Below are positions 52,726-64,000 of a DNA stretch of 64,000 nt, one piece after another. The stretch's first letter is position 1; the number at the start of each line of letters is the position of its first letter. Made by a program: the position numbers and the translations under genes. The DNA is taken from positions 62,001-126,000 of the IMG/VR virus record IMGVR_UViG_3300017963_000192; one strand, 5' to 3'. The notes beneath the pieces were generated by a model, which saw only the letters and a list, made by a program, of their open reading frames with translations, was not told where the DNA came from and did not search any database.

Positions 52726-53898
52726 TTAAACTCTAAAAAGAGTAAGATGTATAATCTTGTTATTAAATTCAACAGCTTCACCGATTAATTTGGTAGAACT
52801 CTTGTCTTTTTCATCTTTCTCTTCCCTAAATTCAATTATCTTGTAAGGCTGCCCTTGAGCCTCACCATAGATAACCTTCTCCTTAAACTTCTTCAAAAGT
52901 TCCTTTCCCAGAAGCCCTTTAACTTTTTTAGGATTAAACTCAAACAAGTTGTTTTCTTCTTTTTTCATAAAAGAACTGCCCTCTTTCTCAACAACATCGT
53001 CCTTAACAGACTGCCAAGAATCTGGAAGATTATAAATATCCATACCCTTAACTTTGTTTTCTGTGATAAAGATAGCTCCAACTTGGTTTTCGATAGGTGG
53101 GATTTTCTTCATAGCTTCTCTAATGCTTGAAGACAAATCATCTAATGTTGCTGCTAAATCATCAGATGCCGGAACGTCTCTTGTAGGCTCATCTGGTTCT
53201 GATGAAAGTGAATCCATACTTGCAAACATCATATCTACTCCATTATCAATACTGTCATTAAGATTGACAGATGAAGATGTAGTAAATGTACTAGATGCTT
53301 CTGATGTAACACCACTAGTTTCATCAGACACATTAGATGCATATACATTTTGACTTTCTACACCACGACTTTTTAAACCACTTTTCTTGGTTAATCGCCT
53401 ATTGCTCAGTTTAACTTGAGCATTTTGTGGTTCTCCATACACAGAACAGCTATAAAGATTAACACTATTCCAGGTACTGCCTTGATTAGAAAGATCAATA
53501 TCATATGGGGTTCTACCACCATATTTCATATCTGCTCCTTTTTGTATCCCTTTGCTTTGGTGAATACATCTAACAGCAACTCGCTGCCCTTTTCCAGCCA
53601 ATACAATGTGACCGTGAATAGCAGCCCTTTCTTGAGTTTTACCTCTGAAGATTTCACCTCTACTGATAAGTAGAGGTACATCCTCATTGTTTTTGACATA
53701 AACGTAGTCGATCATACCTGTGTCTTCTACTTTTACATCCTGTGCTTCTGCAAACGTGATATAATCACGTTTCTCGTCAACTTCCCTTTTAACAGGTACG
53801 ATGACGTTTAGAGATTCTTCACTCATTCTCCAAGGCTCGTCTAGAACGAATCCATCCTTTTCCTCTATGACAGCCCCAATAAATTTTTGAATCTTCAT
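52726..53898 (-). CDS. ARPP-1 / DUF6569-like protein
   Basis: VKNNEDVPLLISRGEIFRGKTQERA...VAVRCIH; AAGGAGG RBS. Confidence 0.6.
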   Translation of the reverse strand: MKIQKFIGAVIEEKDGFVLDEPWRMSEESLNVIVPVKREVDEKRDYITFAEAQDVKVEDTGMIDYVYVKNNEDVPLLISRGEIFRGKTQERAAIHGHIVLAGKGQRVAVRCIHQSKGIQKGADMKYGGRTPYDIDLSNQGSTWNSVNLYSCSVYGEPQNAQVKLSNRRLTKKSGLKSRGVESQNVYASNVSDETSGVTSEASSTFTTSSSVNLNDSIDNGVDMMFASMDSLSSEPDEPTRDVPASDDLAATLDDLSSSIREAMKKIPPIENQVGAIFITENKVKGMDIYNLPDSWQSVKDDVVEKEGSSFMKKEENNLFEFNPKKVKGLLGKELLKKFKEKVIYGEAQGQPYKIIEFREEKDEKDKSSTKLIGEAVEFNNKIIHLTLFRV

Positions 53899-53946: not shown

Positions 53947-54222
53947 CTATAATACTGCAAGGATTTGTCCACCCTGAATAATAAAAAGCTCCTCGCCCTC
54001 TACTGTTATTGGCACTTTTGGTGTGTTATTATATAAAACTTTATCTCCAACTTCCACATCTAAAGGAATTATTTTACTTCCAGATATAACTCCTCTACCT
54101 TTACTTACTACTATACCCGTATCAAAATGTTGGTCAGCAGTTCCAGGCACGAAAATAGAACCTATCTTCTTCTGTCCTTCTTCTATTTCTCTTACAATTA
54201 CAGCATCACCTAATGCTCTCAT
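53947..54222 (-). CDS. groES: Co-chaperonin GroES (Cpn10)
   Basis: RALGDAVIV, GSIFVP, GIVVSKG, VEVGDKVLY. Confidence 0.88.
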   Translation of the reverse strand: MRALGDAVIVREIEEGQKKIGSIFVPGTADQHFDTGIVVSKGRGVISGSKIIPLDVEVGDKVLYNNTPKVPITVEGEELFIIQGGQILAVL

Positions 54223-57548: not shown

Positions 57549-58037
57549 TTATTCTGGAATAGTTTCTTCAAATAAATCTTCTTCTCCTATTTCCTCAATA
57601 GGTCCTTCTGACATTAAGCTTTCTTCCGTTTCAGTCGTTTTTTCTGGCTTACTTTCCAATATTTCTTTTATCTTTTCGATGATTTTCATTTCAGCAGAAC
57701 CATCTTTTAAATAAAATTCAGATGCTCTTATAAAATCTTCAATAGACATCTTTCCTGCCCAAGCATCTAATGTTGGTTGTAACCAGTTTCTTAATTGTTT
57801 TTTATCTAAAGAATCAATATCTTCTAAATCTATTGATCTTAATATATTAAAACAAACTTCTGCACCACCAGTTGATTCAGCAATCACGAATCTTATTAAC
57901 CCTTCGTCTTTAGATAACTTAATATCAACACCCATTACATCTTTAATTTCATTTTCAGAAGCAATCTTTTTAATAATATTTTCAAGTTCTTTATAAGACT
58001 CTCCTTCCAAAGTAAAAGTATTACTATTAAGTTTCAT
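57549..58037 (-). CDS. Paralog 1 of a family with a shared N-terminal module
   Basis: MKLNSNTF...IIKKIASENEIKDVMGVDIKLS. Confidence 0.6.
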   Translation of the reverse strand: MKLNSNTFTLEGESYKELENIIKKIASENEIKDVMGVDIKLSKDEGLIRFVIAESTGGAEVCFNILRSIDLEDIDSLDKKQLRNWLQPTLDAWAGKMSIEDFIRASEFYLKDGSAEMKIIEKIKEILESKPEKTTETEESLMSEGPIEEIGEEDLFEETIPE

Positions 58038-58048
58038 TTTTTACTCCT

Positions 58049-58468
58049 TTATTTATATTTTAAACTTTCAACATATCTCATAATTTCTTCTTCCCTAAAA
58101 TAGTAATTATGATCTTCTACATATTCTAATAGAATTTTTGCTATATCTTCAGAAGACCACTTAATTATTGGTCCTCCTATATATCCCTTTTCTTCTAAAA
58201 AGCTCTCTACTTCCGAATCATGATTTAATTGAGTCTTAGAAAAATTAATTAATATATCTTTTAAATCATCAATTTCATAAACCCAACCTTCATCACTTTG
58301 CTGTGCCTTTTTTATAGAAAAGTTTATTGTTCCTTCTTTTTGAGAAAGTTTGATATTAACTCCAGAAACATTTTTAATTTCATTTTCAGAAGCAATCTTT
58401 TTAATAATATTTTCTAATTTTTTGTATTCTTCTTTTTCAAAAGAAAAAGTATTACTATTAATCTTCAT
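58049..58468 (-). CDS. Paralog 2 of a family with a shared N-terminal module
   Basis: MKINSNTF...IIKKIASENEIKNVSGVNIKLS. Confidence 0.6.
   Translation of the reverse strand: MKINSNTFSFEKEEYKKLENIIKKIASENEIKNVSGVNIKLSQKEGTINFSIKKAQQSDEGWVYEIDDLKDILINFSKTQLNHDSEVESFLEEKGYIGGPIIKWSSEDIAKILLEYVEDHNYYFREEEIMRYVESLKYK
58344..58396. repeat. 53-bp exact direct repeat, second copy at 59101-59153
   Basis: gaaagtttgatattaactccagaaacatttttaatttcattttcagaagcaat occurs at both positions. Confidence 0.85.
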
Positions 58469-58505
58469 TTTTTACTCCTTATTTTTATACTAAAAATATA
58501 TCACA

Positions 58506-59210
58506 TTAAAAAATTCTACTAATAAAGATATTAACATCAAATATCATAGAAAATTCTCCGTATTTTATATATCTTTCTCCTTCATTAGTAGGGTTTTCAA
58601 ACTCTAAATCTATAAAACTTGAATCTATTTCTTCAAAAGGATGTTTATTACCAGAGTACATAGCCTGAAATCCTTTTACAAATTCTGGTAATTTCATTTT
58701 AATAATTTCTTTTACAGCTTCATTAAATCCCTGTTCATCCATAGAAATATTATTTATTAAATAATTGTACATGTCTTCTTTAGCAAATTCAATTATTTTT
58801 CCTTCATTTACTATTGGCTCTCTATCTTCATTAAAAAATTCTTCCCTTTCCTCATAAGGTATTGGACTTACATCTATACTTATAGAAATTTTTCCTATTT
58901 CATATGGATCTGGGTTCATAGTACCTTCACTTGAATAATAATCAAAATATTCTTCAACTTCTTGTTCCCAATTTTTATCAAAATTAACATCAAAAATCTC
59001 TATGTATTCATCCAAAGATCTACTTCTACCAAATTTGTTATAAATTGGAAATCTTGTTTTATTTTTGTCTATTGCAAACTTAATAAGTCCTTTTTCTTTT
59101 GAAAGTTTGATATTAACTCCAGAAACATTTTTAATTTCATTTTCAGAAGCAATTTTCTTAACTACCTCTTCTATACTTTTGTAATCCTCAATTTTCAGAT
59201 CGAGTTTCAT
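58506..59210 (-). CDS. Paralog 3 of a family with a shared N-terminal module
   Basis: VVKKIASENEIKNVSGVNIKLS. Confidence 0.6.
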   Translation of the reverse strand: MKLDLKIEDYKSIEEVVKKIASENEIKNVSGVNIKLSKEKGLIKFAIDKNKTRFPIYNKFGRSRSLDEYIEIFDVNFDKNWEQEVEEYFDYYSSEGTMNPDPYEIGKISISIDVSPIPYEEREEFFNEDREPIVNEGKIIEFAKEDMYNYLINNISMDEQGFNEAVKEIIKMKLPEFVKGFQAMYSGNKHPFEEIDSSFIDLEFENPTNEGERYIKYGEFSMIFDVNIFISRIF

Positions 59211-60558: not shown

Positions 60559-60592
60559 ATTAAAATATAACTATAATCAGTAAAATTTTAAG
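60559..60592 (-). promoter_or_regulatory. Candidate late promoter CTTAAAAT-N14-TTATATTTTAAT (perfect copy)
   Basis: Upstream of 60529. Confidence 0.6.
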
Positions 60593-61304
60593 TATTCTTT
60601 GACTTATTTATTTCTAATAAATCAGGATTGCTTTCAAGAAAATGTACAACTTCTTCTATAGAAAAAGGCTTTTTTTTATACAATTCACCATATATCATTT
60701 TAGCAAGTACATAATCCTCCTCATAATCAACTGTCAATCGAGGATATCCTAAAGGGCTTTGTAATCCAGCATTATAAAATTCAACATTGAATTTATCTCT
60801 ATTATTTTTAATGTAAGTTGTTACATGTTCTCTATCAGATTTTTTCGTTACTTCATTGTATGTTCTTTGAATGGCTTCACTTTTGAATATTTCTATGCCT
60901 GTTCCTATAGGAAGTCCAACCATAGCAAGTAAATCAAATTTTTTTTCAATTTCTCTTTTAATGGCAAAAGAACCGTAATTAACGTCAATAAAAGGGTTAT
61001 CCCCCGTTATTCTTGCTATGTATTTACTAGGATATTCCTCTGAAATTATGTAAAATCTCTCTAAAACATCCTCTATAGCACCTACAAAAACATTACATCT
61101 CATTTCAAATGCTAAATCTATTATAGGTTTATTAGAACCACAGTAACTTGTAGCTACAAACACCTCATCTACGTTCTCAAAAGCTTGAACTCTTTCAATT
61201 ACGTGTGCTAACAAAGGTTTTCCAGCCAAATCAAGCATAGCTTTATCTGGTAGCCTATTAGATTTCATTCTTGCCTGTATAACAGCTATTACGTTTTTTC
61301 TCAT
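60588..61304 (-). CDS. SpsF-like acylneuraminate/sugar cytidylyltransferase
   Basis: IQARMKSNRLPDKAM, RITGDNP, DREHVT, RLTVDYEED. Confidence 0.88.
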   Translation of the reverse strand: MRKNVIAVIQARMKSNRLPDKAMLDLAGKPLLAHVIERVQAFENVDEVFVATSYCGSNKPIIDLAFEMRCNVFVGAIEDVLERFYIISEEYPSKYIARITGDNPFIDVNYGSFAIKREIEKKFDLLAMVGLPIGTGIEIFKSEAIQRTYNEVTKKSDREHVTTYIKNNRDKFNVEFYNAGLQSPLGYPRLTVDYEEDYVLAKMIYGELYKKKPFSIEEVVHFLESNPDLLEINKSKNT

Positions 61305-61373: not shown

Positions 61374-61400
61374 GATATTTTTTTATTGGTTTATAAAATT

Positions 61401-61472
61401 CGTCCCTGACAGGAATCGAACCTGCTATACATAGTTTTAGAGACTATTGCCTAGCCATTTGGCTTCAGGGAC
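61401..61472 (-). tRNA. tRNA with anticodon CUA (amber suppressor-type), no encoded CCA
   Basis: GTCCCTG AA GCC AAATGGCTA GGC A ATAGT CTCTAAA ACTAT GTATA GCAGG TTCGATT CCTGT CAGGGAC G: full cloverleaf. Confidence 0.92.
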
Positions 61473-61480
61473 GAGTAACT

Positions 61481-61915
61481 TTACGCTACTTTTTCTTCAA
61501 TCCAATGTCTTTTAACACTAACAATTGTCATATTATCAACTTCAAACTCCAATTCGTACTTTTCACAGAGTTTTATGACTCTTGCATTGACCATATATAC
61601 TGTTGAGGTATCATTTACTCTGTTAGGTTCGATTTGGTCAAGGGTTTTCCCCCTACACATACTTAAAAATATGTGATTTGACCGAAATTCAAGGTAAGGG
61701 TAGTCCAAATTGCCTTTTTCACGTTCAATTTGCATCTCTTTTTGGATTTCTTGATAAGAAGAGTCTTTATCTTTCATAAATTCGGGCAAATTGCTCTTAT
61801 TTAGACATTTTGCAAGCCTACTTTCAAATTTTCGGCTTAAATGTTTCGAAATTCTTAATTTTTTTGCTAAATTCTTGTTATGTTCTCGTAATTCGATGTA
61901 TTCTTCTCTAATCAT
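61481..61915 (-). CDS. Hypothetical protein
   Basis: AAGGAG RBS; ends 8 nt before the tRNA. Confidence 0.6.
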   Translation of the reverse strand: MIREEYIELREHNKNLAKKLRISKHLSRKFESRLAKCLNKSNLPEFMKDKDSSYQEIQKEMQIEREKGNLDYPYLEFRSNHIFLSMCRGKTLDQIEPNRVNDTSTVYMVNARVIKLCEKYELEFEVDNMTIVSVKRHWIEEKVA

Positions 61916-61937
61916 TGTAAATCTCCTTATAATTAAT

Positions 61938-62033
61938 TTATAAATTGTGGTTGGTAGGTAAATTAATCATAGGAGGTGAGCGAGAACCTCTATTGGCGGG
62001 AAATTTTCTTAATATTTTGATAATCTAGGTCAT
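61938..62033 (-). other. Leader mini-ORF with an amber stop at codon 3 (MT*IIKILRK...; 31 codons if read through)
   Basis: AAGGAGG-CAAAAA-ATG ACC TAG ATT ATC ... TTA TAA. Confidence 0.4.
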
Positions 62034-62060
62034 TTTTTGCCTCCTTAACTTATAAGGTTC

Positions 62061-62089
62061 AATTTATTATAAAAGTTACAGTTTGTCAA
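62061..62089 (-). promoter_or_regulatory. Sigma70-type promoter TTGACA-N17-TAAATT
   Basis: Perfect -35 box; precedes the leader ORF, the 61481-61915 gene and the tRNA. Confidence 0.5.
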
Positions 62090-62129
62090 TAAAAAAACCC
62101 TTCTAAAAATAAGGAGGGTTTTTTTATTG
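62087..62129. terminator. Intrinsic terminator closing the pentamer array
   Basis: 15-bp inverted repeat CAATAAAAAAACCCT / AGGGTTTTTTTATTG. Confidence 0.8.
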
Positions 62130-62130
62130 G

Positions 62131-62686
62131 TTTTCTGTTCAATTCTGCTCAATTCTTATCTCTTCTGTTCAGTTCTCGTCATATCTTTTCAGCTCTTGCC
62201 ACCTCACTTCTTTTAACTAATTTGACCAGCTAAGTAATGAACTTAGAAAACTTCTTTAAAAGTTCTGGTCTTTTCTACTCTTAACTTCTCAGATCTAAAC
62301 TATTCAAATCTCGTCTACTCTTAACTTGCCTGATCTAGTCTGTTCCTATCTTATAACTAATTTGGGCAGTTAGGTAACGAACCTAATTAATTTCTTTAAA
62401 AATTCTGCCCTCCTCTGTTCTGGACAATTCTTTTCTTTCCTATTCTTTACTCATCAAAACTATCCTACTCTACTCATGTCTGCTCTTTTCTTCTCTCCTC
62501 TTTCCATTTAACTAATTAGGGCAGCCAAGTAATGAACTTGAACAATTCCTTTAAGAATTCTGCCCTCTTTGCTATTCTTGTCTTCTCAGATCTAAACTAT
62601 TCAATTCTCGTCTATTCTTAACTTGCCTGATCTAACCTGATCTTATCTTATAACTAATTTGGGCAGTGGAGGATTAGAACCTCCAC
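62131..62686 (-). ncRNA. Putative guide-RNA array: 4 phased pentamer tracts (15, 19, 16, 16 units of consensus AGA-NN) separated by structured 57-nt repeats
   Basis: Repeats at 62214-62270, 62354-62410, 62509-62565 and a half repeat at 62651-62686; all 66 pentamers have an invariant G. Confidence 0.85.
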
Positions 62687-62704
62687 TAACAAACCAAAGT
62701 TATA

Positions 62705-63448
62705 TTAACCAACCTTTGCCCAATTCTTATCTTTGATAACTGGATTAAATGGTTCAATGGTGTCTGATGCAACAATGCCTTTAATTGAATATGTTCCATA
62801 TGTTCCAGAATTTTCCGGTCTCCAGGCACCGTATCCAGATAATGCTCCAGCTTTTACTATTATCTCAGTCATTTGTTCTGGACTAATAACGTTTTCATCA
62901 AAAGCAACTCTTAAATTTAAAGTCCAATCAGAAAACATTGCTCTGTAAAAAGGCACCAAACTCCCTTTCTTACCACCGAGATTTCCAAGTTCAATGCTTT
63001 TATCGTACTTTTTATATTTAATTGGAATTAAACCTCTCCTTGCTGTAGGAACTACAAAAATAGCCGCCTCTAATGCTTTTTTCATTTTTCTTCCTAGGAG
63101 ATTTTGACCAACATTTACAAACGATTTTTTAAATCCTATTGCAGGTACTCCTACTAAACCTTTTTTTTCATCGAGCCAATGAGCCTTTCCTTTACATTCC
63201 TCATCAGGGTCAACTGCTTTGGTTCTTTTAAGGATTTTATTTTTTTCTTTTTCAAAATCTTCTCTTCGCTCTTTTAAAAGATTTTTTGATTTTGCGTTTT
63301 GAAGAAGCTCTGTTTGCCCTTCAATAACAAACTCAATCCACGAAATAAATCGAGATGGCTCTATAATATTTAGATTATCTTTTACAGAGCCTCCCTTTTT
63401 TTCTGCTTTTTTGCCTAATTCTTGTACACTATCCTTTTTCTTTGGCAT
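62705..63448 (-). CDS. RAMP/Cas7-like RRM-fold protein, candidate effector of the pentamer array
   Basis: FVIEGQTELL first strand, VGVPAIGFKKSF (like the RAMP IPgssiKG motif), YRAMFSDWTL, Gly-rich C-terminal loop AGALSGYGAWRPENSGTYGTY. Confidence 0.7.
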   Translation of the reverse strand: MPKKKDSVQELGKKAEKKGGSVKDNLNIIEPSRFISWIEFVIEGQTELLQNAKSKNLLKERREDFEKEKNKILKRTKAVDPDEECKGKAHWLDEKKGLVGVPAIGFKKSFVNVGQNLLGRKMKKALEAAIFVVPTARRGLIPIKYKKYDKSIELGNLGGKKGSLVPFYRAMFSDWTLNLRVAFDENVISPEQMTEIIVKAGALSGYGAWRPENSGTYGTYSIKGIVASDTIEPFNPVIKDKNWAKVG

Positions 63449-63474
63449 AATTAATTCCTCCTGCTAATTTAATA

Positions 63475-64000
63475 TTAAATCAAAGGCTCATATTCATTCA
63501 CAATTTCTTGTAAAATACTAATCACCTTTTTTAATCTTTTTTCTATTGCTATAAAATGTAAATTTGCTTCACAATCATTTATAAGTGCTTTAGCTAATTT
63601 AACATATTGTAATGCTTGTTTCTTATCATCTATAATTATATCCGATAAATATTGAATCCTTTTATATTTTTTGTTAGATGTTGTTTTTACTCCATGAGAG
63701 CTATATTGAACAGGTATCTCTTTAAGAGAGTGTTTTATTATTTTATTGGCTGGTGCTTTTATTCTTGGTATAGGAACAAATGTAATAGACCTTTCTAATT
63801 GAGATATTTCTCTTGAAACATAAAGCAAATGCCCTTTCTTTTTATCCATAGTTAGAAGCTTGTGTATTTCTCTAAAATTATTAGAATCATATTGCTTTAT
63901 TAACATCTTTGCTATTTCTTTTGTAGTTTCTGCTCCAGTTTCATTTAAAAATTTGTAATAATCTTCTATACAAAGATTTTCATCAATATTTTTGCTTATC
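63475..64000 (-). CDS. Hypothetical protein; 5' end lies beyond the window
   Basis: The frame of the listed ORF (ATG 63906) stays open to the window edge (ISKNIDENL...EIAKMLIK). Confidence 0.55.
   Translation of the reverse strand, partial: ISKNIDENLCIEDYYKFLNETGAETTKEIAKMLIKQYDSNNFREIHKLLTMDKKKGHLLYVSREISQLERSITFVPIPRIKAPANKIIKHSLKEIPVQYSSHGVKTTSNKKYKRIQYLSDIIIDDKKQALQYVKLAKALINDCEANLHFIAIEKRLKKVISILQEIVNEYEPLI

What the first reader, a model, noticed from the sequence alone, without database searches (positions are those of the whole stretch)
62131..63448. RAMP/Cas7-like gene with a phased AGA-NN pentamer array: candidate phage RNA-guided system with a non-contiguous guide code
Seen: 19 nt after the stop of a 247-aa gene, the same strand carries a half repeat, tract 1 (62650-62566), a repeat, tract 2 (62508-62411), a repeat, tract 3 (62353-62271), a repeat, tract 4 (62213-62131), then a terminator. 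The tracts hold 15, 19, 16 and 16 five-nt units. Position 1 is G in 66/66, position 2 is A in 51/66 (never C), position 5 is A in 51/66, and positions 3-4 vary freely, so a fixed AGA scaffold alternates with a variable NN. The phase breaks only at one 7-nt unit at the 3' end of tract 1. NN strings, 5'-3': T1 TA TC TT TC CA TA AT CG AT AT TT TC GA CA AT; T2 AA GG GA AA GC CA GT GT AT TT TG AA AT AA AA AT CC AC GG; T3 TA AC CT TC CA TA GT CG TT AT TT TC GA TA GT AA; T4 AG GG CA GC AA TA CG AC AC AG TA AT GC AT AC AA. Established: RAMP/Cas7 subunits polymerise along guide RNA with a fixed nucleotide period, and the protein has RAMP-like hallmarks (first beta strand, VPAIGFKK, Gly-rich C-terminal loop). 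Inference: one protomer binds each pentamer scaffold and presents NN to a gapped target. From memory, unverified, viral RAMP systems with GGY/NN RNAs (VIPR) have been reported; this would be an AGA-scaffold variant with structured separators.
Basis: partly seen in the sequence, partly recalled or inferred. Interest (0 to 1): 0.97.

Follow-up and report, generated by a model that had tools for sequence, protein, structure and literature searches.

The report
Jumbo-phage VIPR locus, AGA-scaffold guides
A giant phage carries a divergent copy of the recently described VIPR system, in which a small Cas7-like protein sits next to four guide RNAs built from five-base units, here with an A-G-A scaffold instead of the usual G-G-pyrimidine, so it is a real and interesting locus but a member of a known kind.

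Summary
On the minus strand, a 247-aa gene (62705-63448) is followed by four tracts of 16-21 in-phase pentamers. These are the only such tracts in about 73 kb of this phage. The unit reads [A] N N [A/T] G: G in 72/72 units, about 1 bit at each flanking position, about 0.1 bit at the two N positions.

The protein is a Vipr homologue. It hits the solved SUSP1 Vipr directly (E 1e-6) and its family profile hits it at E 4e-19 over the full length. A confident AlphaFold model matches Cas7-type RAMPs.

Its particular features:
- **Scaffold:** AGA replaces GGY, which fits the published 'NNNNG' alternative. The Asp that reads the first G in SUSP1 is Ala here, while the residues that hold the invariant G are kept.
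- **Separators:** the tracts are separated by a 57-nt Y-shaped RNA element with strong covariation and no ribozyme match. It has a fixed junction to the downstream tract.
- **Transcription:** the array probably shares a transcript with vipr and ends at a terminator.

A sister jumbo phage has the same design. No natural target was found, so function (gapped NNx DNA recognition and silencing of a competitor) is inferred by homology only.

The parts
63475..64000 (-). 3' part of a 208-aa gene just upstream of vipr (full gene in L001 9348-9974). Candidate accessory (vap) gene, by position only.
   Evidence: It ends 26 nt before the vipr start codon, on the same strand. A 42%-identical gene sits in the same place in the sister phage. 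No Pfam, NCBIfam or PADLOC family matched. The AlphaFold model is too poor to use (pLDDT 47.5).
62705..63448 (-). vipr gene: 247-aa minimal RAMP (Vipr homologue).
   Evidence: phmmer against PDB hits 36pp_D 'SUSP1 Vipr protein' at E 9.7e-7. A profile of 83 homologues hits it at E 3.8e-19 over residues 2-192 of 202. 1443 representative clusters match at E<=1e-3. The AF2 model has pLDDT 86.9. The top 50 Foldseek hits listed are type III/VII CRISPR effector-complex chains, probability 1.0, and those I recognise are Cas7-family subunits (Csm3, Cmr4, type VII Cas7). phrog_4652 matches at E 3e-15.
62651..62721 (-). Separator S0: a diverged Y-shaped element that overlaps the vipr stop codon, followed by the AAATTAGTTA linker.
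   Evidence: It folds to a closing stem plus two hairpins (-24.9 kcal/mol, z -3.1). Covariance model R1, built without it, finds it at 21.5 bits, E 0.11.
62567..62651 (-). Tract 1: 17 pentamer units (candidate vrRNA guide 1). Paralogue of tract 3.
62509..62565 (-). Separator S1: 57 nt, made of P1 (6 bp), hairpin P2, hairpin P3 and a 10-nt single-stranded linker.
62411..62509 (-). Tract 2: 20 units. The phase runs on into the first strand of S2.
62354..62410 (-). Separator S2.
62271..62354 (-). Tract 3: 17 units. It differs from tract 1 at 6 NN positions, each time in the first N.
62214..62270 (-). Separator S3. Its closing stem carries compensatory changes (GACCAG/CTGGTC).
62135..62214 (-). 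Tract 4: 16 units. It ends in AACAG-AA, like the start of a separator, but no Y element follows.
62087..62129 (-). Intrinsic terminator: a long hairpin flanked by an A-run and a T-run, so usable in both directions.
   Evidence: One search finds the site. One search gives -19 kcal/mol, z -6.1, followed by a U tract on the minus strand.

Best explanation
This is a VIPR (Viral Interference Programmable Repeat) locus of an uncultured jumbo phage.

**Shown here**
- The 247-aa protein is a sequence and fold homologue of SUSP1 Vipr.
- Next to it, on the same strand, lie four unstructured tracts of 16-21 pentamers. Three scaffold positions are constrained and two are free.
- The tracts are separated by a conserved Y-shaped RNA element and closed by a terminator.
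- The nearest relative, in another jumbo phage, has the same design with other NN strings.

**Inferred by homology with the SUSP1 system**
- The operon (208-aa gene, vipr, array) is transcribed as one RNA and cut at or beside the separators.
- One Vipr protomer binds each pentamer, so that a helical filament forms along each tract.
- The invariant G is held by the thumb Arg (R169) and the G-loop Trp (W209).
- The two flanking scaffold bases, mostly A, are flipped out.
- The NN pairs are presented to double-stranded DNA that reads NNx NNx..., forming a gapped R-loop.
- Transcription of a competing phage, satellite or prophage is silenced without cutting.

**Register and specific features**
- In the SUSP1 register G1-G2-Y3-N-N, this scaffold is A-G-A-N-N.
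- The Asp that hydrogen-bonds G1 in SUSP1 (D177) is Ala here (A208), which fits the loss of G at that position.
- The junction between separator and downstream tract is fixed: P1, then 9 nt, then the first unit. The junction between a tract and the separator that follows it varies in phase.
- I therefore favour, weakly, a 5' handle or a defined 5' processing site over the 3' tail of type II VIPR.
For: **Protein**
- Direct PDB hit to SUSP1 Vipr.
- Full-length profile hit, E 3.8e-19.
- RAMP fold.
- In the A1 family alignment (83 sequences) R169, the equivalent of SUSP1 R138, is nearly invariant (>=90%). The G-loop Trp, W209, is the consensus residue but not universal: P0008 has Asn and P0009 has Tyr there.
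- The residue roles come from the structure paper.

**Array**
- It is unique in the 73 kb available and far beyond chance.
- Information per position is 0.91 / 0.08 / 0.10 / 1.16 / 2.0 bit.
- The tracts are unstructured.

**Control and relatives**
- A Felixounavirus of the SUSP1 clade, run through the same scan, shows YNNGG arrays on both sides of vipr.
- The sister jumbo phage (protein 50-57% identical) has two ANNAG tracts with the same separators.

**Separators**
- 98.6% of cells are paired.
- 9 of 12 pairs show compensatory change.
- 0 of 500 shuffles reach the observed values.

**Protein-RNA co-variation**
- Ala at the D177 site goes with no G at G1: this locus, the sister, and P0007 with CNNNG.
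- Asp or Glu together with Trp goes with GG: the SUSP1 clade, P0010, Gordonia phage Ecliptus and P0005.

**Codon-like pattern in the guides**
- Tracts 1 and 3 differ at six NN units, all in the first N.
- Read as codons NNx, the changes are S/T, F or L/L, I/V, I/F or L, H or Q/Y, and I/V.
- That is what two homologous coding targets with the skipped base at the wobble position would give.
- Six of six in the first N has a binomial probability of 1/64.

**No self-target.** None was found in the available sequence, as the published work also reports.
Against: - No natural target was found under any skip rule from 0 to 3. I searched the window, the extra flank and the sister locus, and ran exact 10-unit NNx scans of IMG/VR, JGI metagenomes and GTDB genomes. 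The only hits were chance matches of 18-25 of 34 bases.
- There are no expression data.
- In SUSP1, the substitutions GGY>AGY and GGY>GGA were among the GGY perturbations reported to abolish silencing. An AGA scaffold therefore needs a re-tuned protein. One matching substitution was found, but the pocket for the third scaffold base could not be explained.
- The last tract has no Y element after it, and the sister array ends in an orphan element, so the handle or tail assignment is unsettled.
- One relative (P0008: Asp, but Trp replaced by Asn) does not fit the simple co-variation rule.
- The accessory gene is assigned by position only.
Confidence: 0.85

Rival explanations
1. It is a VIPR-family locus, but its recognition rule or substrate differs from SUSP1. 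Examples would be RNA rather than double-stranded DNA, a different number of skipped bases, or the weakly conserved scaffold A positions also taking part in pairing.
For: - The scaffold differs at two of three positions, and the G1-reading Asp is lost.
- Scans under the published 1-nt skip rule found nothing, locally or in three large collections.
- The protein has N- and C-terminal extensions of about 30 and 25 residues compared with the 202-aa SUSP1 protein.
Against: - The thumb Arg and the G-loop Trp/Arg, which set the 5-nt guide geometry, are kept.
- The differences between tracts 1 and 3 behave like first-codon-position changes, which fits NNx with a wobble skip.
- The exact-match scans were insensitive: they needed 10 perfect units in a row. 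Failure therefore says little.
Confidence: 0.12
2. The period-5 purine tracts are binding sites for some other periodic RNA-binding protein, such as a TRAP-like ring that reads NAG triplets spaced by two bases, or they act as a protein sponge. On this reading they sit next to a RAMP gene by coincidence.
For: - From general knowledge, TRAP binds 9-11 (G/U)AG triplets separated by 2-3 nt, which also gives a period of about 5.
- The units here read N-A-G plus two bases.
Against: - The neighbouring gene is a Vipr homologue.
- The same gene-array pairing recurs in the sister phage and, with other scaffolds, across the family.
- The base before AG is free here, whereas TRAP prefers G or U.
- The tracts hold 16-21 units, not 11.
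Confidence: 0.02
3. The array is a decaying or decoy copy. It would be non-functional tracts left by duplication, or 'solo-like' vrRNAs that only soak up a competitor's Vipr.
For: - Tracts 1 and 3 are duplicates.
- In the sister phage the vipr gene has an in-frame TAA.
- Decoy solo vrRNAs are described for SUSP1 satellites.
Against: - Here the vipr ORF is intact and the phase is kept over 72 units with a single break.
- The separators keep their pairing through compensatory changes.
- Three independent assemblies carry the identical locus.
Confidence: 0.05

Closest known systems
Type II VIPR of Escherichia phage SUSP1 (Vipr + vrRNA; bioRxiv 10.64898/2026.04.26.720920 and .720927; PDB 36pp)
   Same: - Homologous small RAMP protein with thumb Arg, G-loop Trp-Arg and the PAxGFKK helix-1 motif.
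- Guide RNAs made of 5-nt units, with three scaffold bases and two free bases.
- Phage-encoded minimal locus with no cas genes.
- No self-target found.
   Different: - The scaffold is A-G-A, not G-G-Y.
- The G1-reading Asp is Ala.
- There are 16-21 units per tract against 9-16.
- The four tracts form one tandem array directly after vipr, apparently on one transcript. They are separated by a Y-shaped three-helix element instead of each carrying its own upstream region and a 3' pseudoknot tail.
- The fixed junction is on the 5' side of the tract.
- The candidate accessory gene lies upstream and has no detectable similarity to anything.
- The host genome is an AT-rich jumbo phage of about 220-235 kb.
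Alternative VIPR vrRNAs with NNNGG, YNNNG and NNNNG repeats, and hammerhead-interspersed arrays (types I and V), as listed in the founding paper
   Same: - Only the last G of the pentamer is invariant, which is the NNNNG description.
- Several guides sit in one array with structured RNA between them.
   Different: - The two flanking positions here are not free but mostly A (about 1 bit each).
- The separators have no hammerhead core and match no Rfam family.
- I could not see the paper's figures or data tables, so I cannot say which of the seven types this belongs to, or whether this architecture is among them.
Class 1 CRISPR-Cas backbone subunits (Cas7 family: Csm3, Cmr4, type VII Cas7)
   Same: - Same fold (Foldseek E 4e-7 to 1e-4).
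- Polymerises on guide RNA with a fixed period.
- The thumb flips out bases at regular intervals.
- The array has a repeat-guide-repeat layout.
   Different: - The period is 5 nt with three bases sequestered, not 6 nt with one.
- The guide is non-contiguous.
- There are no other cas genes, no adaptation genes, and no CRISPR repeats or spacers.

Membership tests
VIPR | Protein homologous to Vipr | tested here: met
   phmmer hits SUSP1 Vipr (36pp_D) at E 9.7e-7. The family profile hits it at E 3.8e-19 over residues 2-192 of 202.
VIPR | Minimal RAMP fold: one RRM core, a glycine-rich loop and a thumb | tested here: met
   The AF2 model has pLDDT 86.9. The Foldseek top hits come from type III and VII CRISPR effector complexes, with Cas7-family subunits among them. 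The G-loop (residues 200-218) and the thumb hairpin carrying R169 were identified from the alignments. I did not superpose the model on the solved structure.
VIPR | Tandem pentamer repeats next to vipr, with a conserved scaffold alternating with a hypervariable NN | tested here: met
   72 in-phase units in four tracts. Scaffold positions carry 0.9, 1.2 and 2.0 bit, NN positions 0.08 and 0.10 bit. There are no other such tracts in 73 kb.
VIPR | Canonical scaffold GGY (YNNGG) | tested here: not met
   The scaffold is A-G-A (ANNAG). The paper accepts NNNGG, YNNNG and NNNNG as alternative vrRNAs, so this does not exclude membership.
VIPR | Residues that hold the scaffold bases (SUSP1 R138 and W178 for G2; D177 and H17 for G1) | tested here: met
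   R169, W209 and R210 are kept. D177 is A208 and H17 is N51, in step with G1 becoming A.
VIPR | Invariable structured 3' tail on each vrRNA | tested here: inconclusive
   A conserved, covarying Y-shaped element lies between tracts. Tract 4 has only a terminator after it, and the fixed junction is on the 5' side of each tract.
VIPR | vrRNAs are expressed as RNAs of about 100 nt and co-purify with Vipr | not testable with these tools
   This needs RNA sequencing and a pull-down.
VIPR | Natural targets that match under the 1-nt skip rule (NNx), typically in competing mobile elements | tested here: inconclusive
   Nothing scored above shuffled guides locally. Exact 10-unit scans of three collections gave only chance hits. 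The scans could not tolerate mismatches.
VIPR | No self-targeting | tested here: met
   The best self matches equal the shuffled-guide background in the 73 kb available. The rest of the phage genome of about 220 kb was not seen.
VIPR | Small viral locus with an accessory vap gene and no cas genes or CRISPR array | tested here: inconclusive
   The context is a jumbo phage with no cas genes nearby. A syntenic 208-aa gene is conserved in the sister phage, but its function could not be assigned.
Hammerhead-interspersed VIPR arrays (types I and V) | Hammerhead ribozyme between adjacent vrRNAs | tested here: not met
   A permissive Rfam scan (E up to 10) of 61900-64000 found no ribozyme family in the separators. 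The junction has almost no unpaired core bases.
CRISPR-Cas class 1 | CRISPR repeat-spacer array with contiguous spacers, plus further cas genes | tested here: not met
   The intervening tracts are phased pentamers, not free spacers. The neighbouring genes have no Cas domains on record.

The most novel reading that the evidence does not exclude
This jumbo-phage clade may be a distinct VIPR subtype that has not been described. Its features would be:
- an A-G-A scaffold read by a re-tuned G-loop (Asp to Ala);
- a single transcript that carries vipr followed by a repeat-guide-repeat array;
- structured, non-ribozyme repeats that act as 5' handles or nuclease sites.

That layout is closer to a CRISPR array than any VIPR architecture named in the text I could read. 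It could inform how RAMP-plus-repeat arrays arose.
Probability: 0.25. Interest if true: 0.7.

Novelty: new member of a known kind. Interest (0 to 1): 0.45.

Why it matters
VIPR was described only in 2026, and all experiments so far use GGY-scaffold systems from one or two clades.

**A natural specificity swap.** This locus pairs a changed scaffold (AGA) with a changed reader residue (Asp to Ala). In SUSP1, changing GGY to AGY or to GGA abolishes silencing. A system that lives with AGA shows which protein changes re-tune scaffold reading. That would be useful for building orthogonal VIPR tools that do not cross-load each other's guides.

**Processing.** A tandem array with covarying Y-shaped separators, apparently transcribed together with vipr, raises the question of how such arrays are cut without a ribozyme.

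**Ecology.** VIPR now extends to AT-rich jumbo phages, where competition between phages is little studied.

Tried and rejected
**1. Target hunting**
- I scored all four guides, and the sister's two, under skip rules 0-3 against the window, 9.4 kb of extra flank and the sister locus. Nothing scored above shuffled guides.
- Exact 10-unit NNx patterns gave:
  - IMG/VR: 0 hits in four scans and 1 chance hit in a fifth.
  - JGI metagenomes: 1 hit, in a bacterial locus, wrong frame, 24-25 of 34 bases.
  - GTDB genomes: 2 hits in high-GC MAGs, 18-22 of 34.
- All were rejected as chance.

**2. Scaffold pattern scan of IMG/VR.** A scan for WGANN x 8 returned more than 118 loci. They were pentanucleotide microsatellites or 15-nt coding repeats with low NN diversity, and none had a Vipr ORF. 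The scan was uninformative.

**4. Separators as a known RNA.**
- Rfam shows no hammerhead, twister or other family.
- A weak tRNA-model hit on S0 only (19.4 bits, E 0.86) and a T-loop-like UUCAUUA loop suggested a tRNA-like punctuation signal for RNase P or Z. The loop lacks the conserved A58 equivalent, so I leave this as a speculation.

**5. Function of the upstream 208-aa gene.** No family matched, no homologues were found by word search, and the AF2 model has pLDDT 47.5.

**6. Closest longer relative.** P0003 (42% identical) sits on 2-kb contigs. They show only a degenerate purine-rich xNNAG-like tract on the opposite strand. I did not count it.

**7. Assignment to one of the seven published types.** This was not possible, because no figures or supplementary tables are held.
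Full report
**What is in the sequence**

On the minus strand a 247-aa ORF (62705-63448, RBS AGGAGG, stop TAA) follows a same-strand gene after a gap of 26 nt. After the ORF come, in order:
- a structured element that overlaps the stop codon (S0, 62651-62721);
- tract 1;
- a 57-nt separator (S1);
- tract 2;
- S2;
- tract 3;
- S3;
- tract 4;
- a strong hairpin with a U tract (-19 kcal/mol, z -6.1).

I scanned the whole window and 9.4 kb of extra flank for at least 9 of 10 G at period 5. Only these four tracts came up, against 0.05 regions expected in shuffles.

In the published VIPR register the unit is [A] N N [A/T] G:
- G is present in 72 of 72 units.
- The base before G is A 56, T 15, G 1, C 0.
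- The base after G is A 55, G 8, T 8, C 1.
- The two middle bases carry 0.08 and 0.10 bit.

The tracts have no stable fold of their own, and no ORF crosses them.

**The protein**

- Curated libraries give nothing: Pfam, NCBIfam and PADLOC have no match. PHROGs gives an 'unknown function' family (phrog_4652, E 3e-15).
- A plain phmmer search of PDB sequences hits one chain, 36pp_D 'SUSP1 Vipr protein', at E 9.7e-7 over the thumb and G-loop.
- An exhaustive HMMER search of 1.84 billion representatives finds 1443 clusters at E<=1e-3. Most are about 200 aa. Beyond the protein itself, one fragment is 57% identical, one protein is 42% identical, and the rest are about 30-35%.
- A profile of 83 of these hits SUSP1 Vipr at E 3.8e-19 over residues 2-192 of 202.
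- AlphaFold with that alignment gives pLDDT 86.9.
- Foldseek against the PDB returns type III and type VII CRISPR effector complexes as the top 50 hits. Cas7-family backbone subunits (Cmr4, Csm3, type VII Cas7) are among them, with probability 1.0 and E from 4e-7.
- tblastn against GenBank phages finds the Felixounavirus (SUSP1) clade and a Gordonia phage.

**What VIPR is (from the papers)**

- Vipr is a minimal RAMP encoded mainly by phages.
- Its vrRNAs hold 9-16 YNNGG units followed by an invariable structured 3' tail.
- One protomer binds each unit.
- The GGY bases are flipped out and held by the protein, and the NN bases pair with DNA that reads NNx.
- The complex silences transcription of competing satellites and prophages.
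- Seven types are described. Alternative repeats are NNNGG, YNNNG and NNNNG. Array architectures include staggered and hammerhead-interspersed arrays.
- In the SUSP1 structure, G1 is read by H17 and D177. G2 is held by R138 and W178. Y3 sits in a pocket that includes R179.

**Mapping onto this locus**

From the alignments, the SUSP1 residues correspond as follows:

| SUSP1 | This protein |
|---|---|
| R138 | R169 |
| W178 | W209 |
| R179 | R210 |
| D177 | A208 |
| H17 | N51 |

- The two residues that cradle G2 are kept, and G2 is the invariant G here.
- The Asp that reads G1 is lost, and G1 is A or T here.

I tested this link on other family members, using the same period-5 scan:

| Residue at the D177 site | Family member | Scaffold found |
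|---|---|---|
| Ala | This locus | ANNAG |
| Ala | Sister phage | ANNAG |
| Ala | P0007 | CNNNG |
| Asp or Glu, with Trp | SUSP1-clade phage | GG |
| Asp or Glu, with Trp | P0010 | GG |
| Asp or Glu, with Trp | Gordonia phage Ecliptus | GG |
| Asp or Glu, with Trp | P0005 | GG |
| Asp, but Trp replaced by Asn | P0008 | unclear WTNNG-like |

The sample is small, but it supports the register and the idea that protein and scaffold changed together. I could not explain why the third scaffold base is a purine here.

**Separators**

- S1-S3 and the three separators of the sister phage all fold into one shape: a 6-bp closing stem, a first hairpin, a second hairpin with a 5-nt loop (UCAUU or a near variant), then 10 single-stranded bases (AAAUUAGUUA or a near variant).
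- On the six-sequence alignment, 98.6% of cells pair and 9 of 12 pairs in the closing stem and second hairpin show changes on both sides.
- None of 500 shuffles reaches the observed paired percentage or covariation score, and sliding the 3' partner by 1-3 columns collapses the signal.
- The first hairpin also shows U-A to C-G swaps at two pairs.
- S0 is a diverged copy. A covariance model built without it finds it at E 0.11.
- The model finds no other copy in the window or in loci of other VIPR clades.
- A sequence-pattern scan of IMG/VR recovers only this phage and its sister.
- Rfam finds no ribozyme.

*Which side of the tract the separator belongs to.* The distance from the closing stem to the first pentamer is fixed at 9 nt in all six tracts. 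The phase between the last pentamer and the next separator varies (0, +1, +2, +3). In the SUSP1-clade control the fixed junction is between the last unit and the 3' tail. I therefore lean towards the separator working with the tract that follows it, as a 5' handle or as a processing site that sets the 5' end. I hold this loosely for three reasons:
- the sister array ends in an orphan separator;
- cleavage in the AU-rich linker would leave the Y element as a 3' tail, as in type II;
- on that alternative, the terminator would stand in for the tail on tract 4.

**Context**

- Three other assemblies carry the identical locus, on contigs of 16.6, 92 and 218 kb. The longest contig on record is 235 kb.
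- The sister locus lies on a 253-kb contig.
- Both are AT-rich jumbo phages known only from metagenomes, and no GenBank phage is similar at the DNA level.
- The upstream 208-aa gene is 42% identical to the gene in the same position in the sister phage. That makes it a candidate accessory gene, but I could not assign it a function.
- No sigma-70-like promoter lies between vipr and the array, which fits co-transcription. Phage-specific promoters would not be detected by that scan.

**Targets**

- None was found. The large-collection scans needed ten perfect units in a row, so this is weak negative evidence.
- There is one internal clue. Tracts 1 and 3 are paralogues of 17 units that differ at six NN units, every time in the first N.
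- Read as codons NNx, the six changes are S/T, F or L/L, I/V, I/F or L, H or Q/Y, and I/V.
- That pattern is expected if the two guides follow two homologous protein-coding targets with the skipped base at the wobble position, as the founding paper reports for natural targets.
- The probability that all six changes fall on the first N by chance is 1/64. This is suggestive, not proof.

**Verdict**

It is a divergent member of a family published in 2026, not a new kind of system.

Its AGA scaffold falls within the 'NNNNG' alternative that the authors mention. I could not check whether its separator architecture is among their seven types. Function is inferred by homology.

The parts worth following up are:
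- the matched change of scaffold and reader residue;
- the non-ribozyme covarying separators;
- the unknown target.

Noticed in passing
window 61400-61473 (-): A tRNA gene with anticodon CUA, which reads the amber codon UAG, lies 0.7 kb downstream of the array (ARAGORN 'tRNA-Pyl'; Rfam tRNA 57.7 bits). TAG still ends 14 of 54 long ORFs, and treating TAG as sense adds only about 3 kb of ORF length. Several ORFs would extend if TAG were read through (for example 48574-46424, 27003-24856 and 20292-17329). Partial or late-gene recoding is possible.
   Followed up: partly
L009 4205-4207 (sister phage, IMGVR_UViG_3300033143_006101): The sister phage's vipr gene has one in-frame TAA inside an A-run, so gene callers split it into 81-aa and 127-aa pieces. 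The same split is seen in a second sample (L007). It could be a true pseudogene, read-through or slippage at the A-run, or a shared assembly error.
   Followed up: partly
window 57549-59210 (-): Three tandem genes (162, 139 and 234 aa) share a nearly identical N-terminal segment of about 45 residues and then diverge. This is a small paralogous family of unknown function.
   Followed up: no
window 60588-61304 (-); also about 53947-54222 and 52726-53898 (-): The phage encodes a cytidylyltransferase-like protein (Pfam CTP_transf_3) close to the VIPR locus. Further on it encodes a Cpn10/GroES-like protein and an ARPP-1 family protein.
   Followed up: no
window 62567-62651 and 62271-62354 (-): Tracts 1 and 3 are duplicated guides. 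They differ at six NN units, always in the first base, giving conservative changes if read as codons. They may track two variants of one protein-coding target.
   Followed up: partly
L004 1770-1900 (relative P0003, 42% identical): Downstream of vipr and a 170-aa gene lies a purine-rich tract, on the opposite strand, with a degenerate xNNAG pattern and phase slips, ending at a bidirectional terminator. It may be a decayed or antisense-oriented array.
   Followed up: partly
L138 4274-4618 (relative P0008): This Vipr relative has Asn in place of the G-loop Trp that stacks on G2. Its nearby repeats look like WTNNG rather than YNNGG, so it does not fit the simple residue-to-scaffold rule.
   Followed up: no
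window 62651-62721 (-): The first separator overlaps the last codons and the stop codon of vipr. Its second hairpin has a 7-nt UUCUAAU loop, which gives a weak tRNA-model hit (19.4 bits, E 0.86). This hints at a tRNA-like processing signal but was not confirmed.
   Followed up: partly
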